From the IMG/VR virus record IMGVR_UViG_3300003322_000571, positions 1 through 64,000 of that record: 64,000 nt of DNA; one strand, written 5' to 3'. The notes under the pieces were generated by a model. It worked only from the letters and a program-made list of their open reading frames with translations. It ran no database searches and was not told where the DNA came from. The position numbers were made by a program, and so were the translations under genes. Below are positions 18,722-64,000 of the stretch, one piece after another (the stretch's first letter is position 1; each line of letters starts with the position of its first letter).

Positions 18722-19431
18722 TCATTATTGGTATTATTGCAGCGTTGTTGATCGTTGATTTGTTCTTGCTCGTGCGAGAACGGTTCTACTGGGCTCTCAC
18801 GTTGTACATTGCAGCAATTGCTGTTGCTGTTCACAAAATTGACGGCGTCCAGGAATTCATTCTCAGCAATGGTATCTGGGGTATTGTCAGCGCAGCTGGT
18901 GTATATCTGGCAATCGGTGGTCTCGTGTCAATTCTGAAGTGGTATCAACGTATTCGCAAGTACGGCGTCAAGCTGAAAGCAACAGTTGAGAAGTTCAATA
19001 CATCGTACAAGAATCCTGAACCAAAGCCCGGCGTTGAAAAGACTGTTGATGAGCCAGTTGCAGGTATTCCGATCAAGACGAAGCAGACGCAACCTAAGCA
19101 GTTTACTACCGAAGAATTGACGATCGCACGTCGCAAGGCATTGTATGACAAGCTGTATTCAGCTGGCCTATTGAAAGACGCAGACATTTCTCTTGCGCCG
19201 AGCGAAAAAGTTCTGCTCGACGAACAACTGTTCAAAGATGCAATCACTCCTCGTGCAAGCTGCAACAAGGAACGCATCACGATGTGGATTCTGTTGTGGC
19301 CGTTCGTCGCCGTTACATTCTTCGTGGAAGACTTCCTCGGCAACCTCGCTACATGGATGATGGAGCTGCTTAACGGCGTGTACAGCAAGATCGCCCGTAA
19401 CGCTGTCGACCAAAACATTGGAGAGATCTAA
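18718..19431 (+). CDS. membrane protein
   Basis: Several transmembrane segments. Confidence 0.7.
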   Translation: MIIIGIIAALLIVDLFLLVRERFYWALTLYIAAIAVAVHKIDGVQEFILSNGIWGIVSAAGVYLAIGGLVSILKWYQRIRKYGVKLKATVEKFNTSYKNPEPKPGVEKTVDEPVAGIPIKTKQTQPKQFTTEELTIARRKALYDKLYSAGLLKDADISLAPSEKVLLDEQLFKDAITPRASCNKERITMWILLWPFVAVTFFVEDFLGNLATWMMELLNGVYSKIARNAVDQNIGEI

Positions 19432-19943
19432 TGAGCACAGCACAAGAAGTTGTGCTGGTTGAACAAACAATTCCGGAGGCCGTCAAACAAGATACTGATG
19501 CTGCCCTCCGTGTAATTGACGAAGCCCGTGCACACGGTTTTGTTATCTACCTCGGTGGTTCACGCAGAATGGCCGAGCGTTCCCCTGAATTAGTTTTGAT
19601 CAATCAGGAAACTGATTATGATTTCTACGTTCAGAATAGCCCTGAAATCGAACACTTTTTGATCGACAAAGGGTTTCAGTATAGTGATCGTACGAGGAAG
19701 GTCCAGCAAGGACTACAATCGTATGATTTCGATACGAGCACGGTTCTTGTTTTGAAACAAGGTCGTGTAGAGATTTCACTCCGTAAGGACGTTAATCTGT
19801 ACAGGACAGTGTTTGAAAACATAGATCCGTATGTTTACCAAACGGTGTTGTGGAAATCCTCTCCGCACCAACCGAACCGTGAACTGATTCAACCCATCTT
19901 TAACACTTTTCTTTCTATCGCAAGCGCTGCGAAAGGTCTTTGA
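19431..19943 (+). CDS. putative nucleotidyltransferase-fold protein
   Basis: LGGSR...TDYDF. Confidence 0.5.
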   Translation: MSTAQEVVLVEQTIPEAVKQDTDAALRVIDEARAHGFVIYLGGSRRMAERSPELVLINQETDYDFYVQNSPEIEHFLIDKGFQYSDRTRKVQQGLQSYDFDTSTVLVLKQGRVEISLRKDVNLYRTVFENIDPYVYQTVLWKSSPHQPNRELIQPIFNTFLSIASAAKGL

Positions 19944-19945
19944 TT

Positions 19946-20221
19946 ATGCTGTACATTGCTGCCGACAAGCGCAACCTGTTTGATAATGCCATCCACACTA
20001 CTCTCCAAGCTCTTCGTGAGGCAGAGTGTGATTTCGATGACAAGGATTATGAATCAAACGTTGGTTATCTGATTCTCCACCTGCTGAAGACGACTCACTC
20101 TGCTGACAAGAGTTCTGACGATGTGATTCGTGCACTAGGTGTTCTCGAGACGGTCAAGATGGAATACATGCGCACAATCGGTATTCCAGTAGCAAAACAA
20201 CAACAGTACGACGTCGAATAA
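19946..20221 (+). CDS. hypothetical protein
   Basis: ORF. Confidence 0.65.
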   Translation: MLYIAADKRNLFDNAIHTTLQALREAECDFDDKDYESNVGYLILHLLKTTHSADKSSDDVIRALGVLETVKMEYMRTIGIPVAKQQQYDVE

Positions 20222-20301
20222 CTCGCTGAAGTTCTGTTAAGGAACCCCTTGTTGGTCGTTGCATATATAACGTATGTAACCATCAACAAGGGGTTTTTCT
20301 T

Positions 20302-20481
20302 ATGTTTACTGAAGTTCAACAGACGCTTTATTCGATTCGCGTTAATGGCCGCGTTGTTGCCAGCAATCTCCCTTCACGTCAACTTGCAGAAGCACAGCTG
20401 CTCACGTTGCCAGCAGAGCAACGTGCTCTCGCAGAAATCGTGCCTGTAACCGCTGACGGTCGTTCTCTCCTTCTCGGGTAA
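20302..20481 (+). CDS. hypothetical protein (59 aa, below the ORF-track cutoff)
   Basis: MFTEVQQTLYSIRVNG...DGRSLLLG. Confidence 0.6.
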   Translation: MFTEVQQTLYSIRVNGRVVASNLPSRQLAEAQLLTLPAEQRALAEIVPVTADGRSLLLG

Positions 20482-20549
20482 TTTTTGCCGAACATGGGGC
20501 ACTTTTTGTAAATAGGAACGGATTTTCTGACCTATAAAGAAAGTGCTCG

Positions 20550-20705
20550 ATGGACATCCTTACTACTACCGATCTACTCGAAACCATCAACGAAGTTATT
20601 CGTACGTTGGAGGCAGACGAGAGTGTGTTTTATATCGCTTTGGACGTCGCTCATCAACTGAGAGATGAGGTTCAACAAGCTTTGGCTGAATGCAGCGAAG
20701 ACTGA
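20550..20705 (+). CDS. small acidic hypothetical protein
   Basis: ORF MDILTTTDLLETINE. Confidence 0.45.
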   Translation: MDILTTTDLLETINEVIRTLEADESVFYIALDVAHQLRDEVQQALAECSED

Positions 20706-20729
20706 TAAATACTCCATACGGAGAAAATT

Positions 20730-20957
20730 ATGCGCTTCCTGCGAGAACTACTTCAAGAAATTCATGACAAGCGTGGCGACAATGCCGATAACGCTGTTGA
20801 GGACATCGTCTGCGTTCCAGACGATGAAGCTGTTCCTGCAAACGGCACAAAGACTACTGATGTGCAATCTAAGAGGAAGGTTACCACTCAAGTCGACAGG
20901 GCTACAGACTCGTTGATTAAGACGTTGTGGTACTACAACGATGCAGATGCGAGTTAA
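20730..20957 (+). CDS. hypothetical late protein
   Basis: TAAATA plus GGAG upstream. Confidence 0.6.
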   Translation: MRFLRELLQEIHDKRGDNADNAVEDIVCVPDDEAVPANGTKTTDVQSKRKVTTQVDRATDSLIKTLWYYNDADAS

Positions 20958-20962
20958 TCAAT

Positions 20963-21409
20963 ATGGACGAACTACGTAAACAACTAAAAGAAACACTGGC
21001 CTCGGTGTTTGCCTTCTATCTCAAAGTGCACAATTGTCACTGGAATGTCGAAGGTCCTGAATTCTATGAATATCACAAGATGTTCCAGAAGATTTACGAG
21101 GATGTTTATGATTCTGTCGATGCGCTAGCAGAACACATTCGTACTGTTGGCACGTATGCTCCAGGTGGCCTTAAGCGTTATCAAGAATTGTCGTTGATTG
21201 ACGATGCAACAGAAGTAATGACATCATCTCAGATGATCGAAGTACTGATGCAGGACAACGGTGTGATCATCCAGTCGCTGAATGACGCATTCAAACAGGC
21301 GCAAAAGCAAAATCTCCAAGGGCTAATGAACTATCTAGCGGATCGAATCGATCAACACCAGAAATGGGGCTGGTTCCTCCGCGCGTCATCAAAGAAACGA
21401 GGCGAATAA
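20963..21409 (+). CDS. dps: Dps / ferritin-like protein
   Basis: HWNVEGPEFYEYHKMF, DALAEHIR, HQKWGWFL. Confidence 0.93.
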   Translation: MDELRKQLKETLASVFAFYLKVHNCHWNVEGPEFYEYHKMFQKIYEDVYDSVDALAEHIRTVGTYAPGGLKRYQELSLIDDATEVMTSSQMIEVLMQDNGVIIQSLNDAFKQAQKQNLQGLMNYLADRIDQHQKWGWFLRASSKKRGE

Positions 21410-21410
21410 C

Positions 21411-21569
21411 ATGGAATTCCTAAAGCAATTGCTTGCCGAGAGCAAGGAAGAGAAAAAGAAGAAGGGCATCAAGTCTAAAGCAGCTGATGTCTATCACCGC
21501 GACTATATGAAGACGCGCAACAAGCCGTATCGTAAGTACGACGCTCAAGAGCGTTCAAAGGACGAATAA
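21411..21569 (+). CDS. small basic hypothetical protein
   Basis: ORF MEFLKQLLAES. Confidence 0.55.
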   Translation: MEFLKQLLAESKEEKKKKGIKSKAADVYHRDYMKTRNKPYRKYDAQERSKDE

Positions 21570-22363
21570 TGACATTCAAAAAAGTCTCTCGCCTCGATGA
21601 AGGTCCTCTTGACTTTGCTCGCGGATTCGGACGCGAAGGTGTTCGCCAAGTAAAGAATTCTGGAATTGGCCGTGCTGTAGGTAACATGGTTCAAGCGGGA
21701 CGTGATGCATCTGCAGAGGCTGATGCAAAGGCAGTCCAGACGCAATTGATTCAGTCTGTTCAACAGCTTGGTCAGCTCGTTGCAAAGTACAATCAGCTGA
21801 CAGGTCAAGTTCCCGACGAAGTACCGCAGGGTGATGATCTTCCTGACAACCCACGTCCTGCTGATAATGGTCAACAGCCACATCAGCAACAGAAAGACAA
21901 TGTCAAGATGGGTGTTCCAGATGCTTTCCGCACCACGCAGAAGCCTAAAGGTCGTATCGGTCAGCACGGATTTGAATACACGTTTGACTCATACCTTCGT
22001 CAAGTGTATGGCACAGAAGAACAACTCGACGAAGGATTCTGGGATTTCTTGAAGGGTGCAGGTAAAGAAGGTGCTCGCGCAGGTGTTGAAAAGATTAAGA
22101 CGGCGTTGAACCCTGAGAAGTCAACTCTTGCTAAGATGTACCGTGCTGGCCGTCAAGCATCACATGATGGAAATGTCCGTAACATTCAAGCAAAGATGCA
22201 GCAGGTCGCGGCACAGATTGCTGCACTAGCAGAGAAGGTTCCTCAGAAGGAAGCTGCGATCCGTAGTGCAATTGCACAAGTGCCACAACCCCTACAACGT
22301 GCTACGATGTACTTTATTCGTCAAGCGATTGAAAGCAATGGACGTCAAGATCCAACTGTGTAA
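21569..22363 (+). CDS. hypothetical (possible internal virion) protein
   Basis: Two LDEG motifs, resembling prohead-protease cleavage sites. Confidence 0.65.
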   Translation: MTFKKVSRLDEGPLDFARGFGREGVRQVKNSGIGRAVGNMVQAGRDASAEADAKAVQTQLIQSVQQLGQLVAKYNQLTGQVPDEVPQGDDLPDNPRPADNGQQPHQQQKDNVKMGVPDAFRTTQKPKGRIGQHGFEYTFDSYLRQVYGTEEQLDEGFWDFLKGAGKEGARAGVEKIKTALNPEKSTLAKMYRAGRQASHDGNVRNIQAKMQQVAAQIAALAEKVPQKEAAIRSAIAQVPQPLQRATMYFIRQAIESNGRQDPTV

Positions 22364-22427
22364 TTGTTGACTTATTTCTCTTACCTAATTAAGCTCCAGT
22401 ACCTAAAAATACTGGAGCTTTTTTATT

Positions 22428-22736
22428 ATGGTCTGGAAGCTGTTCCTCGACGACGAGCGTTACCCATCTCAAGAAGGTTGGTTCATTGCACGGAGTTCAC
22501 AAGAAGCAATTGAACTGGTTGAGAAAATTGGAATGCCGTGCGAGATCGCTTTCGATCATGACCTTGGCGGTGACGATACGTCGATCAAGTTTATCTGGTG
22601 GGTAATTGATCAACATTACGACAACGGATTGGAGATTGGTGATCTCCAATATTCGATTCATTCACAGAATCCGATCGGCGCTGCCAACATCAAAGGTTTG
22701 ATGGAGGGGTTCCTCAACGATATCCGGAGTAACTAA
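22428..22736 (+). CDS. cyclic-phosphate-processing receiver domain protein
   Basis: LFLDDER, FDHDLG, HSQNPIG. Confidence 0.85.
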   Translation: MVWKLFLDDERYPSQEGWFIARSSQEAIELVEKIGMPCEIAFDHDLGGDDTSIKFIWWVIDQHYDNGLEIGDLQYSIHSQNPIGAANIKGLMEGFLNDIRSN

Positions 22737-22951
22737 TGGAACTAAAGGTACGAGCAATTGTCCGTGTTAAGCGAGCAAACGTCGAGTTTGCTCCAGGACT
22801 TGGAATTGGTGTCCTTGCAACACAAGAGTTCAAAGTTCAAGTGCCGTTGGGTCGAACTGTGACCGATCACAGAGTTTCAGCTTGCATTCATGATGTTGGA
22901 CAAGCATTGCTTGACGATAGTGTAGAAGTAATCTACGAGGAAGTGAAATGA
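22736..22951 (+). CDS. hypothetical protein
   Basis: Translationally coupled ORF. Confidence 0.6.
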
Positions 22952-24021
22952 AAATCTACCTTGTCGGCGGTGCAGTTCGCGATATCCTTCTTGGTCTTGA
23001 GCCGAAGGATCGTGACTACGTCGTTGTTGGTGCAACTCCTGAAGATATGCTCGCTAAGGGCTTTTCGAAAGTTGGTGCATCGTTTCCTGTGTTCCTTCAT
23101 CCTGAAACTGGTGAAGAGTACGCTCTTGCACGTACCGAACGGAAGACGGGCGTTGGTTACAACGGGTTTGACGTGACGTTCGATACGTCTATCACTCTGG
23201 AAGATGACCTTCGTCGTCGTGATCTGACGATCAATTCAATGGCAATGGACCTCGAAACGAACGAGATCATTGATCCGTTCGGTGGTCAAAGTGATCTCAA
23301 GCGAAAGATCCTCCGTCATACAAGTGAAGCGTTTGCTGAGGATCCGGTTCGTGTTCTTCGTACTGCTCGGTTCGCAGCTCGGTACGGGTTTGATGTGTCA
23401 GAAACGACACTGGAGCTGATGGAACAGGTCGCTCCAGAACTTGACCATGTTCCTGCGGAACGAATCTTCGCCGAGTTCCAGAAGGGCTTGATGGAGAAAG
23501 CTCCGTACAGGATGCTTGGTGTACTGGTACAGTGCTACGCTGACAACGTTAAGTCGGTTGAACCATTTCTTCGTGGTGATCATGATCTGTGGCAACGTCT
23601 GCACCTTGTTCGAGATGATACGCCGTTGCATGTTCGGTTTGCTCTGATCGCTCGTCGCTTCCACCCGGAAGATTACGAAGCGTGCAAGATTCCTACAGAC
23701 CTTGCACGAGTGGCGAAAGCAGTTCAGTCGCACTTCTATCAATGGAAGGGACTTCGTACTTGCTCTGATGAACGGTTCGTTAAGATGTGTGACAGATACC
23801 GTGCTTTCAGCAACCCGGACTTCTTCCAGCAAGTGCTCGATGTATTTGAATTCATTGAACATCCGTACGCGATCAAAGGTGTATGGCGTGAACCTATCAA
23901 CGAACGTCTGGCGTTGGCAACGAGCATCGATGCTGCAACAATTGTTGCTAGTCTGCCGATTAAAGACGGCAAGTTGATTCAGGCGAAGATTCACGAAGCA
24001 CGTCTTGCCGCAATGAAGTAA
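22948..24021 (+). CDS. cca: tRNA nucleotidyltransferase (CCA-adding enzyme)
   Basis: [40 protein letters not shown]. Confidence 0.95.
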
Positions 24022-33699: not shown

Positions 33700-33774
33700 G
33701 GGAGTATGGCGTAGCTGGAAACGTACTAGGCTCTTACCCTTGTGTCCACGGTTCGAATCCGTGTGCTCCCACCA
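33700..33774 (+). tRNA. tRNA-Lys(CTT), variant
   Basis: AGG-CTCTTAC-CCT; CCA. Confidence 0.85.
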
Positions 33775-34911: not shown

Positions 34912-34986
34912 GCTCCGTAAACATTGACGGTGATGCCTGGTTTTGTAGTCCAGTTGAAGGCGGTTCGAATCCGTCACGGAGCACCA
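34912..34986 (+). tRNA. tRNA-Thr(TGT)
   Basis: GCTCCGT/ACGGAGC; loop TT-TGT-AG. Confidence 0.8.
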
Positions 34987-35085: not shown

Positions 35086-35283
35086 ATGATCACATTTAGC
35101 GAACTGCGTAAATCGTACAAGTATTTCAAGAACGAGCTTCAGACGAACGACAAGGCAAAGATTTTCAATGCGATGGTGACAGATTTCACCGCCAGTGATC
35201 AAATCAACCCGTTCGACTATGCTGAAGTTGGTCACTTCTATGTGCGTGTTTCGCTGTACCGCCTGATCGCCTGGTTGTACTAA
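35086..35283 (+). CDS. hypothetical protein
   Basis: GGAG RBS. Confidence 0.6.
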   Translation: MITFSELRKSYKYFKNELQTNDKAKIFNAMVTDFTASDQINPFDYAEVGHFYVRVSLYRLIAWLY

Positions 35284-35290: not shown

Positions 35291-35369
35291 TTGCGGCTGC
35301 GTAGCAACACGGTTACTTCTTTGACTCTTAATCAAAACCATAACACCGTTAGCGATTTTATCTCCGCAA
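35291..35369 (+). ncRNA. Y RNA-like RNA 5: minimal, displaying a tRNA-Lys(CTT) anticodon arm
   Basis: GCGGCTGCGTAG...GGTTACTTC-[TTTGA-CTCTTAA-TCAAA]...TTTATCTCCGC. Confidence 0.72.
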
Positions 35370-35388: not shown

Positions 35389-35856
35389 ATGAATCAGTAT
35401 GTCACTGGCGTTCTTGATAACGACGCTAAAGGAACCACAGGTGTCGGCACTATCTTCTTCGTCGATGTAACACTCGACGGAATTAAGACAAGGCATACGT
35501 GGGGACTGGTTGAACAAATTCAAGGGAAGTTCGATCTAGACGCTGTCGTCGCTCCTGTTCGCGAACGTTTGAAAGCAGCTGCTTCTGCACAGAAGGCAGC
35601 TGAAGAACAAGCGAAGAAGGAAAAGATGGAGCAGCGTGAAGCAAGCGTTGTAGTTGATGACGTACTGGCTTCACTTGTCAAGACAGTACTGAACGATTCG
35701 GGAAGCGCAAAAGCGATTTCTGAGTACAAGTCGGGCAAGGAAAAAGCACTGAATGCACTCGTCGGATCTGTGATCAAGCAGATCAGGACCCAGAAGTTGA
35801 ATGTCAGCTTCGATGCATTCACAATCAACAGAGCTCTGCAAGCACAACTTGCATGA
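35389..35856 (+). CDS. protein with a C-terminal GatB/YqeY tail domain
   Basis: EYKSGKEKALNALVGSVIK. Confidence 0.65.
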   Translation: MNQYVTGVLDNDAKGTTGVGTIFFVDVTLDGIKTRHTWGLVEQIQGKFDLDAVVAPVRERLKAAASAQKAAEEQAKKEKMEQREASVVVDDVLASLVKTVLNDSGSAKAISEYKSGKEKALNALVGSVIKQIRTQKLNVSFDAFTINRALQAQLA

Positions 35857-47238: not shown

Positions 47239-47919
47239 ATGAAGTACATCGTTGAAGTTCATGCCGCTGAGGGCGGTGACGATAGCAAGTTGTTCGTGAA
47301 GGACCTTGCGCAAGCATACACGAAGTTGTTCCAGCGTTTTGGCTGAAAGCACCGGGTTGTTGTAGAGAAGGACGGCGAAATTCACATTGAAGTGAGTGGC
47401 TCTGATCTATCACAGCTCAACAATGAACCCGGTGGCCATAGGCTTCAACGAATTCCTCCCACGGAAAAACGTGGAAGAGTTCATACGTCCACTGTTACTG
47501 TCGCTGTAATCGATACAGATAGCTATGCGACACCTGATTTTACTCAGATTGATCCTAGTGATTTCAAGATTGAGTGGTACTCAGGAACAGGTGCAGGTGG
47601 ACAGCACCGTAATAAACATCAGAACAGTATCCGACTTACACACGTACCTACGGGGTTAGTTGAGACGTCTCAGTGCCGGAGCCGGGAGGCTTCTCACAAA
47701 GAGGCGATGAGTCAGATGGTGAAGCGGTTGCAGAGCAATGCAAGTTACCAGCGTGTAGTAGCTCAATCAATTGAGCGTAAGCGTCAAATGGGAACAGGTA
47801 TGCGAGGTGACAAAATTCGTACATATCGCTTCCAAGATGATGTTGCCACAGACAACCGTACAGGTAAGAAGGTCAACCTTTCAAAAGTAATGAACGGACA
47901 ATTCGACCTTCTTTGGTAA
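47239..47919 (+). CDS. class-I release factor (RF1-like PxT motif, lacking domain 1) with an in-frame TGA at codon 36
   Basis: EVHAAEGGDDSKLF...FG*K; EPGGHRLQRIPPTEKRGRVHTS; GAGGQHRNK; KIRTY. Confidence 0.9.
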
Positions 47920-48456
47920 TCATTTGTTCAGTGTTTGTAGAATAGCCTTGACTTTGGCGGAGTTGATCTCTTTCGGATCCTCCGCCTTTTCCTTTGCTGG
48001 ATGCAGAACACTATGAATGATCGATTCAGCGATCTTCTTAGCACCCGATACTGGCTTGACTTCCTCTTCTACGACTGGTTGTTCCGTTTCCTCTTCTGGT
48101 TCAGTTTCACTTTCCGTAATCATCTCTGGCAATGATTCAGAATGGACTTCAACGATTGGTTTACTGTCGTAGCTAATGTCACCCTTTGCAGCTTCGAAGA
48201 AATATCCGTCAACAATCACTTCAATGCGGAATTCGGTCGGCTTGTCTTCCATCTCCTTCAATGCTGCAACATCAACTGTCCATCCCGTTTTTGATGTTGG
48301 TACGCGTTTTGCATGGAACAACGTTTCTGTAAACGTATCACCAACACACAGACGAACTTTCGGAACTTCGAATCCATCGATGTTCATGATGTTGACATCG
48401 AACTCAACCTCTGTCGTTTCGTTCAGATTTAGATTGATTGTCGTTGAATCAGCCAT
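47920..48456 (-). CDS. hypothetical (late/virion) protein
   Basis: Minus-strand operon. Confidence 0.7.
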   Translation of the reverse strand: MADSTTINLNLNETTEVEFDVNIMNIDGFEVPKVRLCVGDTFTETLFHAKRVPTSKTGWTVDVAALKEMEDKPTEFRIEVIVDGYFFEAAKGDISYDSKPIVEVHSESLPEMITESETEPEEETEQPVVEEEVKPVSGAKKIAESIIHSVLHPAKEKAEDPKEINSAKVKAILQTLNK

Positions 48457-48463
48457 ATGCTAC

Positions 48464-48853
48464 TCACTTACGTTTGAAGGTGACGCTCAATGATTCAGCA
48501 ATCTGCGACATCTTGCGTTTGAAACTGTTACCGTACTTCAGCATTTTGACAATGATGTTCGCCTTCTTCTGATCGACAACGAACATCTTACGCCAAGTGC
48601 TGTTTTTTGCCTTAACAGTGATCATTACGACCTTTTGGTTCGGCAACATCATCTTATTCGATACCGGGGTATATGCTTGGTTGACGAACACAGGCGTAAC
48701 AGCATATCCACCAGTTGCTTGACGAGGTGGTTGAGGAGGAACGTAGATTGTGCACTTGAACAAACCAAACCCCATCGTCAACATGCCGCAGCATGCATCC
48801 ATTCCGAGGCCTTTCGTGATCAAGCCACTATACGTGTTCTTAAACAGTGCCAT
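48464..48853 (-). CDS. hypothetical (late/virion) protein
   Basis: Coupled to the upstream gene. Confidence 0.65.
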   Translation of the reverse strand: MALFKNTYSGLITKGLGMDACCGMLTMGFGLFKCTIYVPPQPPRQATGGYAVTPVFVNQAYTPVSNKMMLPNQKVVMITVKAKNSTWRKMFVVDQKKANIIVKMLKYGNSFKRKMSQIAESLSVTFKRK

Positions 48854-49434
48854 CAGCAATTACCACCACGTGGAACGCGTTCACACACTTCCTGAACGCT
48901 TGGCATACCGTGGAAGTCTTTAAGATCAAACACCGTCAGAGGCGTTGTGCAGTCATCATCGTAGATTGTCAACGTCGCATTTGCTACGTCAATTTCTGTA
49001 CGGTTGCGTTCGTACTTAAGCAATGTCTCTAGTAACGTTACGATCATTACTTCTGTAATCATCATTGAAGCGACATTAGCACTAATTTGATTCAACTCGA
49101 GACCTGCTGATCCTGGTATAGTATGTTCGACAGCTTGTTCATCCCACACAGCTGGAGCAATGTCCTCTACGTAACTATCATTCCCGCCGTATTTGTACCT
49201 GTCATTCTCGTCGAGTGTGACTCCACCATCAAACGTAAACACGTAACTGGTCAGTGGATTATACGTAGAGAAGTTATAGCGATACCAACCATTACCAATT
49301 TCAGCTACCGGAGCATCTACGACAATTGGGTCATTACTGTTGGTGTTCAACTGATAAATGGTGATCGTTGGAGTCAAACCAGGTTGCGGGACTCCGTCGT
49401 TGGTGAAGAACGCTGTGATGATTTTGGTAGCCAT
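48853..49434 (-). CDS. putative virion protein
   Basis: TAAATA upstream on the minus strand; EIGNGWYRY, TIYDDD.TTPL..FDL. Confidence 0.7.
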   Translation of the reverse strand: MATKIITAFFTNDGVPQPGLTPTITIYQLNTNSNDPIVVDAPVAEIGNGWYRYNFSTYNPLTSYVFTFDGGVTLDENDRYKYGGNDSYVEDIAPAVWDEQAVEHTIPGSAGLELNQISANVASMMITEVMIVTLLETLLKYERNRTEIDVANATLTIYDDDCTTPLTVFDLKDFHGMPSVQEVCERVPRGGNC

Positions 49435-49516
49435 TGAAAGACCCTCATGAGCATCGTATTTATTTTCAGCTGGTTAGCAGGAAGGAAATAAATACCGTTA
49501 CAATTAGGAGTCATCG

Positions 49517-50587
49517 ATGAGCGTCATTGTAGCGAAGTCGAACAGAAAGGTTTGCTCAACACCAACGTACAATTGTTTTCCAGCTGTCACAGAACAAGTA
49601 ATTGTTCCTGCCGGCGCAACTGTATTCATTGATGGTTTGTTGACAGACAAGTTCGCCGCTGGCAAATGGTTCATCACATTAGCTACTTCTGATGATCGTC
49701 TTCAAGGGTATGAGCTCTACGCTACCCACCGTAATGGTACTTCACCAACACACGTAATCTACGGTGAAGTTGGCTCACTGATCAATCACACAACGAATGT
49801 TGTGATCAATGCGTCACGTTTGACGTTGACTATCGAAAACAACGAATCGATTGATTTGCTTGTTTGTTTCACACGCGTTGCTGTTCCAAAGGTTCTCAAT
49901 TACGTTGAGACACTCGATGTTGTTGAAGTTGGTAATTTGAACGGCTTTGTTCCAGCAAACACTTCAGGTTCTGTTGATTTCATCGGCAACCAACAAGCAA
50001 TCGGTGTTAAATGGGTTGTTGCTGTTACAACGTCTACAGGTGAGCGTAGTTCTGCTCAAGTGTATGCATCGCTCGGTACAACTGTCCAGGCAGTAACGTA
50101 CGGATTCATTGGTGATCAACTAGCGTATTCAATTGACGTCGAACAGGTAGCCGGCTTTGGATATAATCTCGTTGTGTCGAATCTGACGAGTAATCCGATC
50201 CGCGTAGATATCACACGTGTTCCTATTCAGTTGACCACAGGCGTGTCATATTGTGGTCCTAGCGCAGGTCTTGACCTGTGGATTCCACAACCTGTCACGG
50301 TTCAGCCAACACAGACGACAACTGTCGACACATTGTCAACGACGCAGGCATATGCTGCTGCGAAATGGCTTGCGGTGTTGTCAAATACGACAAATCAAAC
50401 AATGGCTTTTGAAGTTGCATCTGTTGAATCGGGTGTTACTTCAGACACTATGTACGCAATTATCTCCGACTACTTTGATGTAGACGTAGAGACCGTTGTA
50501 TCAGGTCAGACCGTACAACTTAACGTCACTAATAATCAACCTGATGCAATTACTGTTCGAATGCTGCGCATTCCGGTAGCCTTGTAA
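49517..50587 (+). CDS. virion protein with three internal repeats
   Basis: Three (A/V/G)KW...Y(G/A) beta-rich repeats. Confidence 0.7.
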   Translation: MSVIVAKSNRKVCSTPTYNCFPAVTEQVIVPAGATVFIDGLLTDKFAAGKWFITLATSDDRLQGYELYATHRNGTSPTHVIYGEVGSLINHTTNVVINASRLTLTIENNESIDLLVCFTRVAVPKVLNYVETLDVVEVGNLNGFVPANTSGSVDFIGNQQAIGVKWVVAVTTSTGERSSAQVYASLGTTVQAVTYGFIGDQLAYSIDVEQVAGFGYNLVVSNLTSNPIRVDITRVPIQLTTGVSYCGPSAGLDLWIPQPVTVQPTQTTTVDTLSTTQAYAAAKWLAVLSNTTNQTMAFEVASVESGVTSDTMYAIISDYFDVDVETVVSGQTVQLNVTNNQPDAITVRMLRIPVAL

Positions 50588-50607
50588 GCATCGAAGTGTG
50601 AGTTAAT

Positions 50608-51396
50608 ATGGCAATTGAACTATTCAGGATCAGGAAAGGTATTGAGATTGACAACTCCGTGTGTATTCTGTACGGAGATGGTCCACCCGGCTCTTCACAA
50701 GATACTGATGATGCAGGCGTAGGTTCGATGTACCTTGACGCTACGAATGGTGATTCGTACTCAAAGATCAATCCAAGCGCAGGATCGAACTCTTGGCAGC
50801 GCATCGCTGCTGAAGGTCAAAACTTATACCGTGAGCATCCTGTTACACCAGCACCTGGTCTGGCAGCTGGTCCTAATTCGATGGCTTTCGGTCAAGCTGC
50901 TCAAACAGCTCCTGAGGCGCACGATGCTGTAGCTATTGGTCCTCAGTCGTATGCACGTCTTCCAGGTTTGGTTCAAGCGTCGGGTCGTTTTGGAAGTTCG
51001 GGCGATGCACAAGCTGGTCGTTACATTTTGCGAACAGTTTCCGTTAATCAGTTTGCAACAACGATGTTCTTCGACGGAACCAACGGAACAGAACGGTTGA
51101 CATTGCCTGATGACTGCACATGGAGGTTCAAAGCGACAATCGTAGGACACCGTATTGATGCAGAAGGCCACGCAGGTTATACGATTGAAGGTTTAGCATA
51201 TCGATTGGCAGGCCCTGGTACGACAAGTATCTTGGGATCGACAATCAAAAATATCATAGCAGAGAGCGATCCAGCATGGGATGTTGAAGTAGTCGCTGAT
51301 ACAGTTAATGGTAGTTTGAACATTAACGTCACAGGTGAGTCTGGAAAGACGATTCGTTGGGTCGCCATCGTTGAAACGGTAGAAGTGACCAACTGA
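50608..51396 (+). CDS. fibre-associated virion protein
   Basis: YadA-like A(I/F)G motifs; C-terminal domain shared with 51453. Confidence 0.7.
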   Translation: MAIELFRIRKGIEIDNSVCILYGDGPPGSSQDTDDAGVGSMYLDATNGDSYSKINPSAGSNSWQRIAAEGQNLYREHPVTPAPGLAAGPNSMAFGQAAQTAPEAHDAVAIGPQSYARLPGLVQASGRFGSSGDAQAGRYILRTVSVNQFATTMFFDGTNGTERLTLPDDCTWRFKATIVGHRIDAEGHAGYTIEGLAYRLAGPGTTSILGSTIKNIIAESDPAWDVEVVADTVNGSLNINVTGESGKTIRWVAIVETVEVTN

Positions 51397-51452
51397 AAGG
51401 AATAATGCATTTAGGGTAAATACACCTACACGTCCAACATTGGAGAAATTCT

Positions 51453-54173
51453 GTGAATTTTAACCACGACACTGGCTTAGTCGATAGCCTTCTTACAATC
51501 GACACAACAGTTGCGCCACCACTTGGTGGTTTGACGAACACTCTTGCTATCACAGGCACAGGTTCGCTGGTTCTTCCTCATGGTTCAACAGCTGAGCGTC
51601 CGGGTACGCCTGTTGAGGCTATGATTCGCTACAACAACAGCACACAGGATCTTGAATTCTACGACGGCACAAGTTGGGTTGAAGTTTCTTCTTCCGTAGG
51701 TACTGTGACATCTGTGACTGTGACAACATCAACAGGTATGACAGTATCTGGTGGTGTTACACAAACAGTTACTGACAACGGAACGTTCGCTCTTGTATTG
51801 TCACCAGAACTGCAAGGATTGTCGGCACTTGCTGTAACTGGTATTGTTACACGTACAGCAGCTGGTACATATGTATCACGCACGATCGCTGGTACAGCTG
51901 GTGATATCGTTGTTGCGAACGGTGATGGCGTATCTGGGAATCCAACATTGTCGCTTGCTACAGTCGGTACTCCTGTATCGAATGGCTTCCTTAAAATCAC
52001 TACAGATACGAAGGGTCGTGTAACAGGTACAACAGCAGTTACAACTGCGGATGTTACGACACTTGTTGATGGAACATACGTCAACATTTCTGGTGATACA
52101 ATGGCGTCAGGTGCAAACTTGACGTTTACGGGCGGTGGTGAAATTCTAGGTTTGCCTGCGATGCCGTCAGATCCAACATCTGCCGCTTCAAAGGCGTACG
52201 TTGATGCTACTGCTCAAGGTTTGGCGACTAAAGATTCCGTCCGTGTTGCTACAACAGGCCCGGGTACACTTTCTTCGTCGTTTGCAAACGGTCAAACAGT
52301 TGACGGTATTGTTCTTGTAACAGGCGACCGTATCCTGATCAAAAACCAGACGAGCCAAGCCGAAAACGGTATCTATGTTGTACAAGCAGCAGGTACGCCT
52401 GTCCGTGCTGTCGACATGGACATTTGGGCGGAAGTTCCTGGCGCTTACTGCTTTGTAAGCGGAGGTACATTAAATCACGATACTGGTTGGGTGTGTACAT
52501 CTCAACCTGGCGGTACAATCAACGTTAACCCAATCACGTTCACGCAGTTCTTTGGTGCTGGTGCTTACACAGCTGGCGTTGGTTTGACGCTGAACGGTAC
52601 TGAATTCTCGTTAACGTCTCCTGTTGCAACAACGCTTGGTGGTACTGGTTTGACGACTGTAGGTGGTGCTAACACTGTTCTTGGTGTCAATGCTGCTGGT
52701 ACAGCTTATCAAGCTAAGACTATTGCTGCTGGTACGGGTGTTTCTGTAACGCACAGCACAGGTACGATTACGCTCGCTAACACAGGTGTTACTTCCGTCG
52801 CTGGTACAGCTGGTCGTGTTACGGTTTCTGGTTCGACAGGTGATGTTACAATCAGCTTGCCTAACGATGTTTCCGTCGCTTCTGTTACTGCTACAGGTTT
52901 GACACCGAACGGTGCTTTGTTTGCAAGTGCTGGTGGTCTCGTAAGCTCAACAACAGCAATGACGAACGGTCAGTTGTTGATCGGTAATACAGGCACAACA
53001 CCATCAGTTGCTACACTTGCCACAGGTACGGGTATTTCTGTAACAAACGGTGCTGGTACAATCACGCTTGCTAACACGGGCGTTACATCCCTGACTGCTG
53101 GTACAGGTATCAGCTTGTCTGGTGCAACAGGTGCGATCACTGTTACGAACACAGGTGTGACATCAGTTAACGCTTCAGGCGGTACAACAGGTTTGTCGTT
53201 CAGTGGTGGTCCAGTTACAACGACAGGTACGTTGACGCTCGGTGGTACTCTTGCTCCATCGAACGGTGGTACGGGGTTGACAGCACTTGGTGTTGCTAAC
53301 TCTGTTCTAGGTGTCAACGCTGCTGCGTCGTCAGCAGAATACAAGACTGTTGAAGCTGGCACAGGTATTTCCGTAACACACAGCGCAGGTCAAATTACAG
53401 TTGCTAACACAGGTGTAACATCGGTTGGTCTTGCTGCGCCAAGCATCTTTACGGTTGCCGGCACGCCTGTTACAACAACAGGTACGTTGACACTCAGTCT
53501 TGCAACACAAACTGCAAATACAGTATTTGCAGGTCCTACTTCAGGCGGTTCTGCAGCACCAACGTTCCGTTCGCTGGTATACAACGACTTGCCAATCGCA
53601 TTGTACAAGGAAAATCCATCGACGCCTACAGCGCCTGTAGCTTCTGGTACAAACGCAATTGCTATTGGTAGCGGCTCGTCAGCTACTGCACAAGGTGGTT
53701 TGGCTCTCGGTATTGGTTCTGCAGCTCGTGTATACGGTCAAGTTGCTGTTGCTAACGGTCAATTCACTTCTGTCGGTGATGCACAACAAGGTACATACAT
53801 CTTCCGCAACATCACCACTAACGCAACGCAAACGGAATTGTTCCTTGATGGTGTCACAGGTACACAGCGTCTTGTAATGCCTAACAACAGTGCAATGACG
53901 TTCTCGATCCTGGTAACAGGTCGTCGTACCGATGCTGTAGGTGGTGGCGCTGGTTACCGTATCGACGGCGTTGCTCGTAAGGATGCAACAGCTGCTTCTG
54001 CAACAATCATTGGTGCTGTTGTTAAGTCGGTCCTTGGTGAAACAAATGCGGCATGGGATGTAACGGTTGACGCTGACACAACAAACGGTTCGCTCCGTGT
54101 TCGTGTAACAGGTGAAGCTGCTAAAACAATTCGTTGGGTTGCTGTTGCAACGACTGCGGAAGTAACAAACTAA
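51453..54173 (+). CDS. tail fibre protein
   Basis: GSTAERP..MIRYN, SVRVATT, GDRILIKNQT..ENGIY, NTGVTS repeats. Confidence 0.85.
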   Translation: MNFNHDTGLVDSLLTIDTTVAPPLGGLTNTLAITGTGSLVLPHGSTAERPGTPVEAMIRYNNSTQDLEFYDGTSWVEVSSSVGTVTSVTVTTSTGMTVSGGVTQTVTDNGTFALVLSPELQGLSALAVTGIVTRTAAGTYVSRTIAGTAGDIVVANGDGVSGNPTLSLATVGTPVSNGFLKITTDTKGRVTGTTAVTTADVTTLVDGTYVNISGDTMASGANLTFTGGGEILGLPAMPSDPTSAASKAYVDATAQGLATKDSVRVATTGPGTLSSSFANGQTVDGIVLVTGDRILIKNQTSQAENGIYVVQAAGTPVRAVDMDIWAEVPGAYCFVSGGTLNHDTGWVCTSQPGGTINVNPITFTQFFGAGAYTAGVGLTLNGTEFSLTSPVATTLGGTGLTTVGGANTVLGVNAAGTAYQAKTIAAGTGVSVTHSTGTITLANTGVTSVAGTAGRVTVSGSTGDVTISLPNDVSVASVTATGLTPNGALFASAGGLVSSTTAMTNGQLLIGNTGTTPSVATLATGTGISVTNGAGTITLANTGVTSLTAGTGISLSGATGAITVTNTGVTSVNASGGTTGLSFSGGPVTTTGTLTLGGTLAPSNGGTGLTALGVANSVLGVNAAASSAEYKTVEAGTGISVTHSAGQITVANTGVTSVGLAAPSIFTVAGTPVTTTGTLTLSLATQTANTVFAGPTSGGSAAPTFRSLVYNDLPIALYKENPSTPTAPVASGTNAIAIGSGSSATAQGGLALGIGSAARVYGQVAVANGQFTSVGDAQQGTYIFRNITTNATQTELFLDGVTGTQRLVMPNNSAMTFSILVTGRRTDAVGGGAGYRIDGVARKDATAASATIIGAVVKSVLGETNAAWDVTVDADTTNGSLRVRVTGEAAKTIRWVAVATTAEVTN

Positions 54174-62390: not shown

Positions 62391-62446
62391 CACACAACCC
62401 TAATATTTCTGTTGGGGTAACGTACTCAACCATATATACTTTCTTC

Positions 62447-62513
62447 AGCTGTTGCGTAGTTCAAGGGTTACTTCTTTTGGTGAAACTATCCCCTTGACGT
62501 TTTAATCTCAGCT
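62447..62513 (+). ncRNA. Y RNA-like RNA 6: minimal
   Basis: AGCTGTTGCGTAG-TTCAAGGG-TTACTTC...CCCTTGAC-GTT-TTAATCTCAGCT; TATACT -10 box just upstream. Confidence 0.75.
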
Positions 62514-62526
62514 TTAACATATGTAC

Positions 62527-63573: not shown

Positions 63574-64000
63574 ATGTCAAAACTCAATCCAACTGGTCGT
63601 AACGTTACGACAAACATTGTTGCGGTTGCTGCGAACCGTGGTGAACAGCTTGCTGTTTCTGCGAATGGCAACTTGCAATTCAAGAAGGACTCCTACCAGA
63701 CGTTGTACGAAACAACTGTTTCGACGATGCTTGGCAAGGGCAACCAACTGAATTCTGCTGATGCGCTTGTGCAAAAGCTGAAGGCGTCCGTTCGTTCTGT
63801 TGTTGCTGATGGCGCCAGCTCATTCGACTTCATTGCGAACCTCGCAATCCACGCACGTACGGAGATGAACGTCCGTACGATCCCAATCGTTCTTGTGGTT
63901 GAATTTGCGAAGGCGCTCGCCGATCAGCGTCAACCGTTGGTTGCACGTGTTGATGCGATTGAACAAGAACTGACTACAGCTCGTAAGGCTAAGCGTGCGA
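63574..64000 (+). CDS. Ro60/Rsr-like TROVE-domain protein (N-terminal part; runs off the window)
   Basis: GGAG RBS; open to the window end; DFIANLAIHARTEMNVRTIPIVLVVE resembles the TROVE F.A.LA.YAR..M.LR..P helix. Confidence 0.72.
   Translation, partial: MSKLNPTGRNVTTNIVAVAANRGEQLAVSANGNLQFKKDSYQTLYETTVSTMLGKGNQLNSADALVQKLKASVRSVVADGASSFDFIANLAIHARTEMNVRTIPIVLVVEFAKALADQRQPLVARVDAIEQELTTARKAKRA

What the first reader, a model, noticed from the sequence alone, without database searches (positions are those of the whole stretch)
35291..35369. Minimal Y-like RNA presenting a tRNA-Lys(CUU) anticodon stem-loop, a possible decoy for anticodon nucleases
Seen: immediately after TTACTTC lies TTTGA-CTCTTAA-TCAAA, a perfect 5-bp/7-nt Lys anticodon arm, inside an array holding four tRNA-Lys genes. 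Established: tRNA-Lys is the target of PrrC and of PARIS AriB. Inference: a Ro60-protected bait, inhibitor or sensor for tRNA-cleaving defences.
Basis: partly seen in the sequence, partly recalled or inferred. Interest (0 to 1): 0.85.

Follow-up and report, generated by a model that had tools for sequence, protein, structure and literature searches.

The report
Phage Y RNA showing a tRNA-Lys anticodon arm
This 79-base stretch is a small non-coding "Y RNA" that partners with the phage's own Ro60 protein. Its tip is an exact copy of the anticodon arm of a lysine tRNA, a feature that recurs in other phages and may act as bait for bacterial enzymes that cut tRNAs.

Summary
After GUUACUUC, 35320-35336 forms a perfect 5-bp/7-nt hairpin, UUUGA-CUCUUAA-UCAAA.

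The element at 35291-35369 is a minimal, YrlB-like Y RNA:
- A covariance model built only from Ro60-adjacent RNAs of other phages finds it (38 bits, E 2e-6), together with one paralogue at 62446-62513.
- Its two scaffold helices covary across the family.
- The phage's own Ro60 gene (TROVE+vWA) starts at 63574 and runs off the window.

The hairpin is identical in all 17 nt to the anticodon arm of real bacterial tRNA-Lys(CUU) genes. The same hairpin, with CUU or UUU, sits on otherwise diverged Y RNAs of at least 11 other phages or contigs, several next to Ro60. One is the cultured Ralstonia phage RsoM2USA.

It is not Lys-only. The same cassette carries GUU, AUU, UCU, UGA or CGA in other phages, and the nearest paralogue has a different loop. 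In tRNA-like Y RNAs this hairpin sits 4-6 nt before the T arm, like an anticodon arm.

Positions 36-41 (UAAUCA) equal the published AriB cleavage context. "Y-like RNA" is supported. An anticodon-arm mimic is well supported as anatomy. A decoy function for PrrC or AriB is plausible but untested.

The parts
35291..35369 (+). Minimal (YrlB-like) Y RNA gene, in the 106-nt gap between ORF 35086-35283 and ORF 35389-35856.
   Evidence: Model R2, built without any window sequence, scores it 38.3 bits, E 2.3e-6. Model R1 scores it 62.9 bits. There is no tRNA or Rfam call here.
35292..35296 (+). Terminal helix H1, 5' strand. It pairs with 35364-35368.
   Evidence: The helix is in the MFE fold. All 5 family pairs show compensatory changes. 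The paralogue has GCUG/CAGC in place of GCGG/CCGC.
35298..35304 (+). UGCGUAG, the counterpart of the GNCGAAN0-1G motif proposed as the Ro60 contact.
   Evidence: Ro60-adjacent homologs carry GCGAAG, GCGUAG or GCGCAG at this position. The motif is defined in PMC4201824.
35304..35313 (+). Inner helix H2, 5' strand. 35304-35305 pairs with 35352-35353, and 35309-35313 pairs with 35345-35349.
   Evidence: The pairing is. In the family, 5 of 7 pairs have changes on both sides, and 94% of cells are paired.
35312..35319 (+). GUUACUUC, the near-invariant family heptamer/octamer. It contains the YUAY of Chen et al.
   Evidence: It is present in 50 of 51 short family members and invariant in alignments A5 and A6.
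35320..35336 (+). Apical anticodon-arm-like hairpin UUUGA-CUCUUAA-UCAAA. The loop is 35325-35331, the 'anticodon' CUU is 35327-35329, and positions 36-41 read UAAUCA.
   Evidence: Sequence and fold are. It is identical to the anticodon arm of 20 real tRNA-Lys(CUU) genes. The identical 17-mer occurs in the L128 Y RNA. The cassette recurs with other triplets. The AriB site is described in PMC12409363.
35345..35353 (+). H2, 3' strand.
35353..35363 (+). Conserved 3' single-stranded tract CGAUUUUAUCU. The family consensus is CG-AUUUUUCU.
   Evidence: Alignment A5. The tract is identical in the closest homolog, L059:3522-3593.
35364..35368 (+). H1, 3' strand.
62446..62514 (+). Paralogous minimal Y RNA, about 1.06 kb upstream of Ro60. 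Its apical loop is UUUUGGU, not Lys-like.
   Evidence: R1 69.2 bits. R2 36.2 bits, E 6.4e-6. Alignment.
63574..64000 (+). 5' part of the phage Ro60 (Rsr) gene. The full gene spans contig 63574-65250 and runs off the window.
   Evidence: L069:4001-5677 has TROVE at 7e-21 and VWA_2 at 3e-6. It was found as a relative of other phage Ro60 proteins. Window coordinates equal contig coordinates.
1586..1731 (+). Possible third Y-like RNA of the window. It is tRNA-shaped (acceptor, D arm, T arm), with GCGUAG...GUUACUUC inside a 60-nt insertion where the anticodon arm would be.
   Evidence: Support is weak: R2 gives only E 0.93 and the MFE fold is indecisive.

Best explanation
35291-35369 encodes a minimal Y RNA, the RNA partner of the phage's own Ro60 (TROVE+vWA) protein, whose gene starts at 63574.

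The paired 5' and 3' ends (H1, H2), with the UGCGUAG and GUUACUUC motifs, form the Ro60-binding scaffold. This is inferred from homology to RNAs encoded beside Ro60 genes.

The apical 5-bp/7-nt hairpin is the effector module. It corresponds to the first hairpin (called 'V') of tRNA-like Y RNAs. In those RNAs it sits 4-6 nt before the T arm, so it is best read as a retained anticodon arm.

In this copy the hairpin is a perfect replica of a bacterial tRNA-Lys(CUU) anticodon arm. The most likely mechanism is that the Ro60-Y RNA particle presents this arm as a tRNA mimic to a protein that recognises anticodon arms. My favoured class is host tRNA-cleaving defence nucleases, with the mimic titrating them or being sensed by them. 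This would complement the phage's large set of tRNA genes and its tRNA-repair and translation-rescue genes.

Shown: family membership, conserved structure, presence of Ro60, sequence identity to real anticodon arms, and recurrence of the module. Inferred: Ro60 binding, expression and processing from the tRNA-array transcript, and the target of the mimic.
For: Family membership and association with Ro60:
- A motif-only scan found the same architecture directly upstream of TROVE+vWA genes, on the same strand, in six other phage contigs.
- In 19 minimal members, 10 of 12 pairs show compensatory changes. 94.6% of cells are paired against 69% in shuffles, covariation is 0.66 against 0.20 (0 of 500 shuffles), and slid controls give 32-55%.
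- Model R1 gave 153 hits over about 1.05 Mb of Ro60 loci. All are on the Ro60 strand, and most lie within about 0.8 kb upstream of Ro60.
- Model R2, built without window sequences, finds only the candidate and 62446-62513 in the window at E<1e-5.
- The phage's own Ro60 gene is confirmed.

The hairpin as an anticodon arm:
- The 17-mer equals the anticodon arm of real tRNA-Lys(CUU) genes in 20 genomes.
- E. coli lysT shares the 15-nt core of the UUU version.
- The identical 17-mer occurs on the diverged L128 Y RNA, between two tRNAs and about 200 nt upstream of Ro60.
- Further Lys-type hairpins occur in L059, L134, L135, L140, L142, L148, L152, L155, L159 and cultured phage RsoM2USA, on three different stems. 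Ro60 lies adjacent in L135, L140 and L152.
- These loci are scattered over the Ro60 tree.
- Loops identical to real anticodon loops occur in 9 of 72 short and 12 of 49 long Y RNAs, against 0.27 and 0.73 in shuffles.
- In tRNA-like members, the spacing from hairpin to T arm is most often 4-6 nt.

Context: the window also encodes a CCA-adding enzyme, a HAD_SAK_2 RNA-repair domain, PTH2 and an RF-1-domain protein.

Literature: Hughes et al. raised the possibility that YrlA acts as a competitive inhibitor of an anticodon nuclease (PMC7790460). A phage Ro60-like protein counters a defence system (PMC11482910).
Against: - There are no expression, processing or binding data.
- The fold alone is not significant (z -0.63), and no promoter or terminator lies nearby.
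- This copy lies 28 kb from Ro60, whereas published Y RNAs lie within 4 kb.
- The UGCGUAG motif departs from the published GNCGAAG by one base.
- The hairpin cassette carries many triplets in other phages (GUU, AUU, UCU, UGA, CGA). The paralogue, and most minimal Y RNAs, have other loops. The variable positions may therefore be unconstrained loop bases rather than a specificity code.
- The pattern scans fixed the stem, so stem conservation is partly a search artefact.
- AriB needs D-loop contacts that a bare hairpin lacks.
Confidence: 0.5

Rival explanations
1. The RNA is a Lys-specific bait, inhibitor or sensor for nucleases that cut tRNA-Lys (PrrC, PARIS AriB), held by Ro60.
For: - Lys-type loops (CUU or UUU) are kept on three different stems in diverged phages: the candidate, L128, L148, L159, L134, L135, L155, L140, L059 and RsoM2USA.
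[quoted passage not shown] U39A or A41C block cleavage (PMC12409363).
- The phage's own Lys tRNAs read UAAUCU, UAAUCC and UACCCU, and its Thr(UGU) tRNAs lack UAAU. This fits the picture of resistant phage tRNAs plus one susceptible-looking mimic.
- The neighbouring tRNAs are Lys, Asn and Thr(UGU), which are the AriB target set.
Against: - The same cassette carries GUU, AUU, UCU, UGA or CGA elsewhere.
- Two of the phage's Asn tRNAs also read UAAUCA.
- AriB also needs D-loop U16/U17, and restoring the cleavage site in T5 tRNA-Lys did not restore cleavage.
- The host and its defence systems are unknown.
- No assay has been done.
Confidence: 0.2
2. The hairpin is only a structural element of the Y RNA, a stable U-turn loop of the form CU-NN-UAA. 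The match to tRNA-Lys is a coincidence of two free loop positions, with no mimicry involved.
For: - The CU NNN AA loop is a family trait, seen in 22 of 121 Y RNAs, with GCU and GUU the commonest triplets.
- With U36 fixed, 2 of 16 dinucleotides give a Lys anticodon.
- The UUGA/UCAA stem also occurs in real Asn, Met, Arg and Pro tRNAs.
Against: - The full 17-nt identity to real tRNA-Lys(CUU) arms.
- Lys-type loops are retained while the stem changes: UUUGA, UUCA, UCUUA.
- Anticodon-loop identity is enriched about 30-fold in short and 16-fold in long Y RNAs over shuffles.
- The hairpin-linker-T-arm geometry is that of a tRNA.
Confidence: 0.2
3. The mimic recruits a tRNA-Lys-handling housekeeping enzyme to Ro60, or titrates it, rather than acting on a defence nuclease. 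Candidates are lysyl-tRNA synthetase and enzymes that modify anticodon-loop positions 34 or 37.
For: - YrlA is modified by tRNA enzymes and is cut by RNase P (PMC4201824).
- The loop keeps U36-A37.
- From my own knowledge, the anticodon is the main identity element for LysRS, which would tolerate C or U at position 34.
Against: There is no gene-neighbourhood or other evidence here. Triplet diversity across phages argues against a single synthetase partner.
Confidence: 0.07
4. The element is a decayed tRNA-Lys(CUU) pseudogene left in the tRNA array.
For: It lies inside a tRNA array and carries a perfect Lys anticodon arm. A GG-UUA stretch upstream aligns with the D loop of the phage's tRNA-Lys.
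Against: - There is no acceptor, D or T arm. ARAGORN finds nothing even at relaxed settings with introns allowed, and Rfam tRNA finds nothing at E<=10.
- The flanks match the Y RNA scaffold, with covarying helices.
- The same hairpin sits on Y scaffolds in many phages.
Confidence: 0.02

Closest known systems
YrlB-type (minimal) bacterial Y RNAs of Salmonella Typhimurium and Mycobacterium smegmatis (Chen et al. 2014, PMC4201824)
   Same: Both are short RNAs whose 5' and 3' ends pair into a stem carrying a GNCGAAG-like motif. Both are encoded with a Ro60 (Rsr) gene and alongside a tRNA-like YrlA-type sibling, and both lack the T and D arms.
   Different: - The motif here is UGCGUAG.
- The octamer GUUACUUC is conserved.
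- This copy lies 28 kb from Ro60, inside a tRNA array.
- The apical module is a perfect anticodon-arm replica, which has not been described for YrlB in the papers I could read.
YrlA, the tRNA-like Y RNAs of bacteria and mycobacteriophages (PMC4201824)
   Same: They share the scaffold and the YUAY element. The phage has YrlA-like siblings (L015:12658-12775 and perhaps window 1586-1731). The hairpin here corresponds to their 'V' stem-loop.
   Different: The candidate has no T arm, acceptor-like arm or D arm. The published model treats the Ro60 stem as the anticodon-stem equivalent and V as a variable arm. My data suggest instead that V is the anticodon-arm equivalent: it has a 5-bp/7-nt CU NNN AA hairpin and lies 4-6 nt before the T arm.
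[quoted passage not shown]
   Same: Both are phage-encoded RNAs bearing a Lys-type anticodon loop, in a phage with a large tRNA array. Both relate to AriB, which cuts at U36AAUC|A41.
   Different: The T5 RNAs are full, functional tRNAs that escape cleavage through U39A and A41C and replace the cut host tRNA. The candidate is not a tRNA and keeps the susceptible UAAUCA sequence. If it acts on AriB, it would do so by competition or sensing, not by substitution.
HIV-1 genomic tRNA-like element that mimics the tRNA-Lys3 anticodon loop and binds LysRS (recalled from memory, not checked here)
   Same: A viral RNA hairpin that copies a tRNA-Lys anticodon loop to engage a tRNA-binding protein.
   Different: It belongs to a eukaryotic virus, involves no Ro60 and has a different purpose (primer placement). 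It is an analogy only.

Membership tests
Bacterial/phage Y RNA (Ro60 partner) | A Ro60/TROVE protein gene in the same genome, on the same strand | tested here: met
   The Ro60 gene lies at contig 63574-65250 on the + strand, with TROVE at 7e-21 and VWA_2.
Bacterial/phage Y RNA (Ro60 partner) | Encoded within about 4 kb of the Ro60 gene (the criterion of Chen et al. 2014) | tested here: not met
   The candidate lies 28.2 kb upstream of Ro60. Its paralogue 62446-62514 lies 1.06 kb upstream. Other Y-like copies of this phage are also dispersed in the tRNA array.
Bacterial/phage Y RNA (Ro60 partner) | The 5' and 3' ends pair into a stem, with a GNCGAAN0-1G-like motif on the 5' strand | tested here: inconclusive
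   The stem is present and covaries. The motif is UGCGUAG, one base away from GNCGAAG. Ro60-adjacent homologs use GCGAAG, GCGUAG or GCGCAG at this position.
Bacterial/phage Y RNA (Ro60 partner) | A YUAY element after the inner helix | tested here: met
   UUAC lies at 35313-35316, inside the near-invariant GUUACUUC.
Bacterial/phage Y RNA (Ro60 partner) | Sequence and structure homology to RNAs found next to Ro60 genes, using a model that excludes the candidate | tested here: met
   Model R2, built from 17 RNAs of other phages, scores it 38.3 bits, E 2.3e-6.
Bacterial/phage Y RNA (Ro60 partner) | Physical binding to Ro60 and stable accumulation as a small RNA | not testable with these tools
   No transcriptome or binding data are available. 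The contig comes from a metagenome.
YrlA subclass (tRNA-like Y RNA) | T arm, acceptor-like stem-loop and D arm | tested here: not met
   The module between the H2 strands holds only one hairpin plus 8 nt. The candidate therefore belongs with the minimal YrlB-like members.
tRNA / tRNA-Lys gene or pseudogene | A cloverleaf detectable by ARAGORN or Rfam RF00005 | tested here: not met
   ARAGORN makes no call at default or relaxed settings, with introns allowed. Rfam gives no hit at E<=10.
Anticodon-arm mimic of tRNA-Lys | Sequence identity of stem and loop to genuine tRNA-Lys anticodon arms | tested here: met
   17 of 17 nt match 20 genomic tRNA-Lys(CUU) genes. The 15-nt core of the UUU variant equals E. 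coli lysT.
Anticodon-arm mimic of tRNA-Lys | Lys identity conserved in homologs | tested here: inconclusive
   Lys-type loops occur in at least 12 Y RNAs on three different stems. The same cassette carries GUU, AUU, UCU, UGA or CGA elsewhere, and the paralogue has UUUUGGU.
Decoy or inhibitor of anticodon nucleases (PrrC, AriB) | Binding, cleavage or inhibition by the nuclease | not testable with these tools
   The only finding is a sequence match, UAAUCA, to the AriB site U36AAUC|A41.

The most novel reading that the evidence does not exclude
Phage Y RNAs are circularly permuted tRNA derivatives whose first hairpin is the anticodon arm. A conserved cassette (UUUGA-CU NNN AA-UCAAA) is re-programmed at the triplet in different phages: Lys, Asn, Arg, Ser. 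Ro60 would thus display anticodon-arm decoys or tripwires matched to the tRNA-cleaving defences of each host, such as AriB-like or PrrC-like nucleases. This would be an RNA-based anti-defence layer working beside the phage's tRNA arrays.
Probability: 0.2. Interest if true: 0.9.

Novelty: new variant of a known kind. Interest (0 to 1): 0.7.

Why it matters
The role of Ro60 and Y RNAs in bacteria and phages is still open. Published ideas include tethering Ro60 to nucleases and competitive inhibition of an anticodon nuclease (PMC7790460).

A recurrent Y RNA module that is a base-for-base copy of a tRNA anticodon arm, and that carries the AriB recognition hexamer, turns that idea into a concrete experiment. 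It also links Ro60 and Y RNAs to the current picture of phage tRNA arrays as counter-measures against tRNA-cleaving immunity.

It suggests two further points. The 'V' stem-loop of tRNA-like Y RNAs may be a retained anticodon arm. Some 'tRNA genes' annotated in phage arrays are in fact Y RNAs, for example L068:3727-3799.

A homolog in the cultured Ralstonia phage RsoM2USA makes wet-lab work feasible.

Tried and rejected
- **Thermodynamics alone.** The z-scores were -0.63 and +0.51, so this was not informative.
- **Known RNA families.** Rfam gave nothing here at gathering thresholds or at E<=10.
- **tRNA or pseudogene.** ARAGORN gave no call at default, relaxed or intron-allowing settings. An alignment to the phage's Lys tRNAs shares only the loop and GGUUA. 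This reading was rejected.
- **Near-identical phage genomes.** None were found. Flanking ORFs have no Pfam or PHROG family. The 155-aa neighbour finds only its own contig.
- **Locating the Ro60 gene.**
  - tblastn with actinophage-type Ro60 proteins did not find a Ro60 gene in the window.
  - A two-sequence Ro60 profile also missed the phage's gene.
  - A more diverse profile found it at 63574.
- **Is the 17-mer a common cellular tRNA-Lys arm?** It is not common. There were 76 genomic hits, close to my own estimate of about 70 expected by chance, although 20 are genuine tRNA-Lys(CUU) genes.
- **Is the UUGA/UCAA stem Lys-specific?** It is not. Real Asn, Met, Arg and Pro tRNAs have it too.
- **Window 1586-1731 as a circularly permuted YrlA.** The anatomy fits by eye, but the MFE fold and model R2 do not settle it.
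- **Ro60 in RsoM2USA.** None was found within 52-101 kb of the record. The rest of that genome was not examined.
- **Clustering on the Ro60 tree.** The Lys-type loci do not cluster: five changes are needed, the same as for shuffled labels. Absence of the hairpin elsewhere is not established, because Y RNAs can lie far from Ro60.
Full report
**Where the window comes from.** The window is the first 64 kb of a 350,089-bp viral contig, IMGVR_UViG_3300003322_000571. Window coordinates equal contig coordinates. The contig is a jumbo phage with a Gp23-type capsid protein. That protein is distantly related (about 25-37% identity) to those of XacN1, RsoM2USA, PA5oct and similar jumbo phages. There is no near-identical record among deposited phages.

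The tRNA array is very large. It holds 30-32 genes in the window and 22 more at the far end of the contig. The window also encodes the following translation, RNA-repair and NAD functions:
- a CCA-adding enzyme
- a HAD_SAK_2 RNA-repair domain protein
- NAMPT
- NAD kinase
- NADAR
- ADP-ribosylglycohydrolase
- an RF-1-domain protein
- PTH2

**Checking the observation.** The finding lies in a 106-nt gap between ORFs 35086-35283 and 35389-35856. The described sequence is present exactly:
- TTACTTC at 35313-35319
- TTTGA at 35320-35324
- CTCTTAA at 35325-35331
- TCAAA at 35332-35336

The minimum-energy fold contains this hairpin plus an outer and an inner helix. The fold is no more stable than shuffled sequence (z -0.63). 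The loop heptamer is not rare in the window. Rfam and ARAGORN find nothing there, even at permissive settings. Taken alone, the element would be unconvincing.

**A repeated motif leads to Ro60.** The string GCGTAG-N7-8-GTTACTTC occurs three times in the window, at 1653, 35299 and 62454. It occurs once more near the contig end (L015).

The copy at 62447-62513 is a close paralogue. It has compensatory changes in both helices: GCGG/CCGC becomes GCUG/CAGC, and ACGG/CCGU becomes CAAGGG/CCCUUG. Its apical loop differs and reads UUUUGGU.

A scan of viral contigs for the motif alone returned six other contigs with the same architecture. In each one the match lies immediately upstream of a TROVE+vWA (Ro60) gene, on the same strand. 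This matches the published description of bacterial and phage Y RNAs: a GNCGAAN0-1G motif near the 5' end, then a YUAY element, encoded beside Ro60 (PMC4201824).

**The family.** I collected 25 and then 79 further Ro60-encoding viral loci. These loci carry tandem arrays of 2-10 such RNAs. The arrays mix tRNA-like members that have a T arm with minimal members that have only a hairpin.

An alignment of 19 minimal members gives two helices with 12 pairs, and 10 of them show compensatory changes. In that alignment:
- 94.6% of cells are paired, against 69% after shuffling.
- The covariation score is 0.66 against 0.20 (0 of 500 shuffles reach it).
- Slid controls reach only 32-55%.

The covariance model R1 gave 89 and 64 hits over about 1.05 Mb of Ro60 loci. 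Every hit is on the Ro60 strand, and most lie within about 0.8 kb upstream of Ro60, with some immediately downstream. GUUACUUC, or a close variant, is present in 50 of 51 short members.

Because the candidate was part of the R1 seed, I built a second model, R2, from 17 RNAs of other phages only. In the whole window R2 finds two matches at E<1e-5: 35291-35368 (38.3 bits, E 2.3e-6) and 62446-62513 (36.2 bits).

**The phage's own Ro60.** With a more diverse Ro60 profile, the phage's own gene appeared at contig 63574-65250. It has TROVE at 7e-21 and VWA_2. The gene starts inside the window and runs off its end, which explains why ORF listing and my first tblastn search missed it.

The candidate is therefore a Y RNA of a Ro60-encoding phage. 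It lies 28 kb from the Ro60 gene, in the tRNA array. Its paralogue lies 1.06 kb upstream of Ro60.

**Is the hairpin a tRNA-Lys anticodon arm?** Several results support this reading:
- The exact 17-mer occurs 76 times in 185,579 species genomes. Twenty of those occurrences are positions 27-43 of bona fide tRNA-Lys(CUU) genes, in Planctomycetes, Acidobacteriota and other groups.
- E. coli lysT has G-UUGA-CUUUUAA-UCAA-U.
- Among Y RNAs found without reference to the hairpin, L128:3626-3719 carries the identical 17-mer although the rest of the RNA has diverged. It sits between tRNA-Pro and tRNA-Gly, about 200 nt upstream of Ro60.
- The closest homolog of the candidate, L059:3522-3593, has UUCA-CUUUUAA-UGAA.

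Pattern scans for UACUUC followed within 8 nt by UUGA-CUYUUAA-UCAA added Y-like RNAs in L134, L135 and L140 from viral contigs. They also added L142, L148, L152, L155 and L159 from metagenomes. Ro60 lies adjacent on the same strand in L135, L140 and L152. In the alignment of these RNAs only GUUACUUC and the hairpin are conserved. Their Ro60 proteins are 30-48% identical and scattered over the Ro60 tree.

A BLAST search with the candidate's core found an unannotated spot in the tRNA array of the cultured Ralstonia phage RsoM2USA. L294:2483-2560 is a minimal Y RNA (R1 22.7 bits, E 1.8e-4) with the hairpin UCUUA-CUUUUAA-UAAGA. A tRNA-like Y RNA lies about 90 nt downstream. Lys-type loops are thus kept on three different stems.

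**Is it Lys-specific?** Across the family it is not. Leaving the triplet free in the scan returned Y RNAs with the same stem and loop flanks but other triplets:

| Triplet | Loci |
|---|---|
| GUU | L244, L250, L263, L239 group |
| AUU | L266, L268 |
| UCU | L238, L264 group |
| UGA | L290 |
| CGA | L248 |

Ro60 adjacency or a model hit confirms L238, L244/L253, L263, L264 group, L267, L268 and L290. L239, L248 and L266 are judged from their sequence alone. Typically one member of each array carries this cassette.

In a sample of 121 Y RNAs not selected by hairpin, 22 have a first hairpin with a CU NNN AA loop. GCU occurs 6 times, GUU 5 times and CUU twice. Loops identical to real anticodon loops are found in 9 of 72 short and 12 of 49 long members, against 0.27 and 0.73 in shuffled modules.

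In the tRNA-like members this hairpin is most often followed by a 4-6-nt linker, such as UGGUC, and then the T arm. That is the anticodon arm, variable loop and T arm order of a class I tRNA. I therefore read the 'V' stem-loop of Chen et al. as a retained anticodon arm, and the minimal Y RNAs as scaffold plus anticodon arm. This is my inference and it differs from the published assignment.

Many other minimal members have loops such as UUUGGGU or AUUGG. Real Asn, Met, Arg and Pro tRNAs also use the UUGA/UCAA stem. ARAGORN also calls one Y RNA, L068:3727-3799, a tRNA-Arg(UCU).

**Mechanism.** Family membership, conserved structure, the Ro60 gene, identity to real anticodon arms and recurrence of the module are shown. 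Everything else is inferred.

From the literature:
- Y RNAs tether Ro60 to other proteins and gate its cavity (PMC4201824, PMC7790460).
- Hughes et al. suggested that YrlA might competitively inhibit an anticodon nuclease.
- A Ro60-like protein of phage Bas63 counters a defence system and sits beside tRNA genes (PMC11482910).

AriB of PARIS cuts E. coli tRNA-Lys(UUU) at U36AAUC|A41. The UAAU sequence is shared by its targets Lys(UUU), Thr(UGU) and Asn(GUU). U39A or A41C block cleavage, but D-loop contacts are also required (PMC12409363).

The candidate hairpin reads UAAUCA at positions 36-41. The phage's own tRNAs read as follows:

| tRNA | Positions 36-41 |
|---|---|
| Lys (three genes) | UAAUCU, UAAUCC, UACCCU |
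| Thr(UGU) (three genes) | UAAGCA, UAGUCC, UAAGCA |
| Asn (three genes) | UAAUGC, and UAAUCA in two |

This pattern is compatible with a decoy or sensor role, but it does not prove one. I put the generic reading, in which the Ro60-Y RNA particle presents an anticodon-arm mimic to a tRNA-directed protein, most likely a defence nuclease, at about 0.5. A purely structural hairpin gets about 0.2. Recruitment of housekeeping tRNA enzymes gets under 0.1, and a tRNA pseudogene about 0.02.

**Comparison and novelty.** The element is a member of the Y RNA kind, of the minimal YrlB-like subclass. It fails the 4-kb criterion and has a one-base variant of the 5' motif.

Three things are new relative to the papers I could read:
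- the anticodon-arm replica as the effector module
- its recurrence as a cassette with a variable triplet
- the dispersal of Y RNAs through a tRNA array

I found no paper describing this. The library is incomplete, and the 2020 review on bacterial Ro60 was not available.

**Verdict.** This is a new variant of a known kind, with interest 0.7.

Noticed in passing
window 1586-1731: A tRNA-shaped RNA with acceptor GGTAGAT/GTCTACC, a D arm and a T arm. Its anticodon-arm position holds a 60-nt insertion containing GCGUAG...GUUACUUC. ARAGORN in intron mode calls it tRNA-SeC(UCA) with an intron. It may be a circularly permuted YrlA-type Y RNA.
   Followed up: partly
window 4837-4938 and 62293-62391: Two further over-long tRNA-like genes with 26-nt and 21-nt insertions. 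Rfam tRNA scores them 41.4 and 32.4 bits, and ARAGORN finds them only in intron mode. Their nature is unknown.
   Followed up: no
L015:12658-12775 (contig ~349.9 kb): A full tRNA-like (YrlA-type) Y RNA of the same phage, directly after tRNA-Ser. Its first hairpin is UUUUAU-UUUGCUU-AUAAAA, followed by 4 nt and then the T arm. The fold z-score is -1.8.
   Followed up: partly
window 10417-24021 and 47392-64000: An island of translation-rescue, RNA-repair and NAD-salvage genes: HAD_SAK_2, NAMPT, NAD kinase, NADAR, CCA-adding enzyme, an RF-1-domain protein, ADP-ribosylglycohydrolase, PTH2 and Ro60.
   Followed up: partly
window 14540-16069: Two adjacent proteins end in a PEP-CTERM motif. This hints at a Gram-negative host with an exosortase system.
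   Followed up: no
window 33700-33774 and 34912-34986: Phage tRNA-Lys(CUU) has the loop CUCUUAC and tRNA-Thr(UGU) has the loop UUUGUAG. These are non-canonical anticodon loops of the sort proposed to evade anticodon nucleases.
   Followed up: no
L008:102-2274 (- strand; the same contig region as L065): The Ro60 gene of this 197-kb phage is split by an ORF carrying HNH endonuclease and NUMOD3 domains.
   Followed up: no
L068:3727-3799: ARAGORN calls this a tRNA-Arg(UCU), but it is a Y RNA. It has UUGCGUAAG, an inner helix read as an 'acceptor', AUACUUC, UUUGA-CUUCUAA-UCAAA, a T arm and a terminal helix. Some annotated phage tRNAs are probably Y RNAs.
   Followed up: partly
L294:2483-2790 (Ralstonia phage RsoM2USA, MG752970.1 ~75.2-75.5 kb): Two unannotated Y RNAs lie in the tRNA array of a cultured jumbo phage. 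One is minimal with a Lys(UUU)-type loop and one is tRNA-like. No Ro60 was found in record positions 52-101 kb.
   Followed up: partly
L263:2600-4500 (- strand) and L268:4700-6300 (- strand): Arrays of 10 and 8 tandem Y RNAs with different modules lie beside Ro60. Only one member of each array carries the UUUGA cassette.
   Followed up: partly
L163, L196, L208, L221, L223, L228, L237: Near-identical tRNA-Lys(CUU) genes occur in MAGs of unrelated phyla, most with a similar upstream sequence (cgtaattttg or a close variant). This may be a mobile element or prophage.
   Followed up: no
whole window: TTACTTC occurs 20 times against 7.5 expected (0 of 100 shuffles reach this). Only three copies lie in Y RNAs and the rest lie in ORFs. 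This is unexplained.
   Followed up: no
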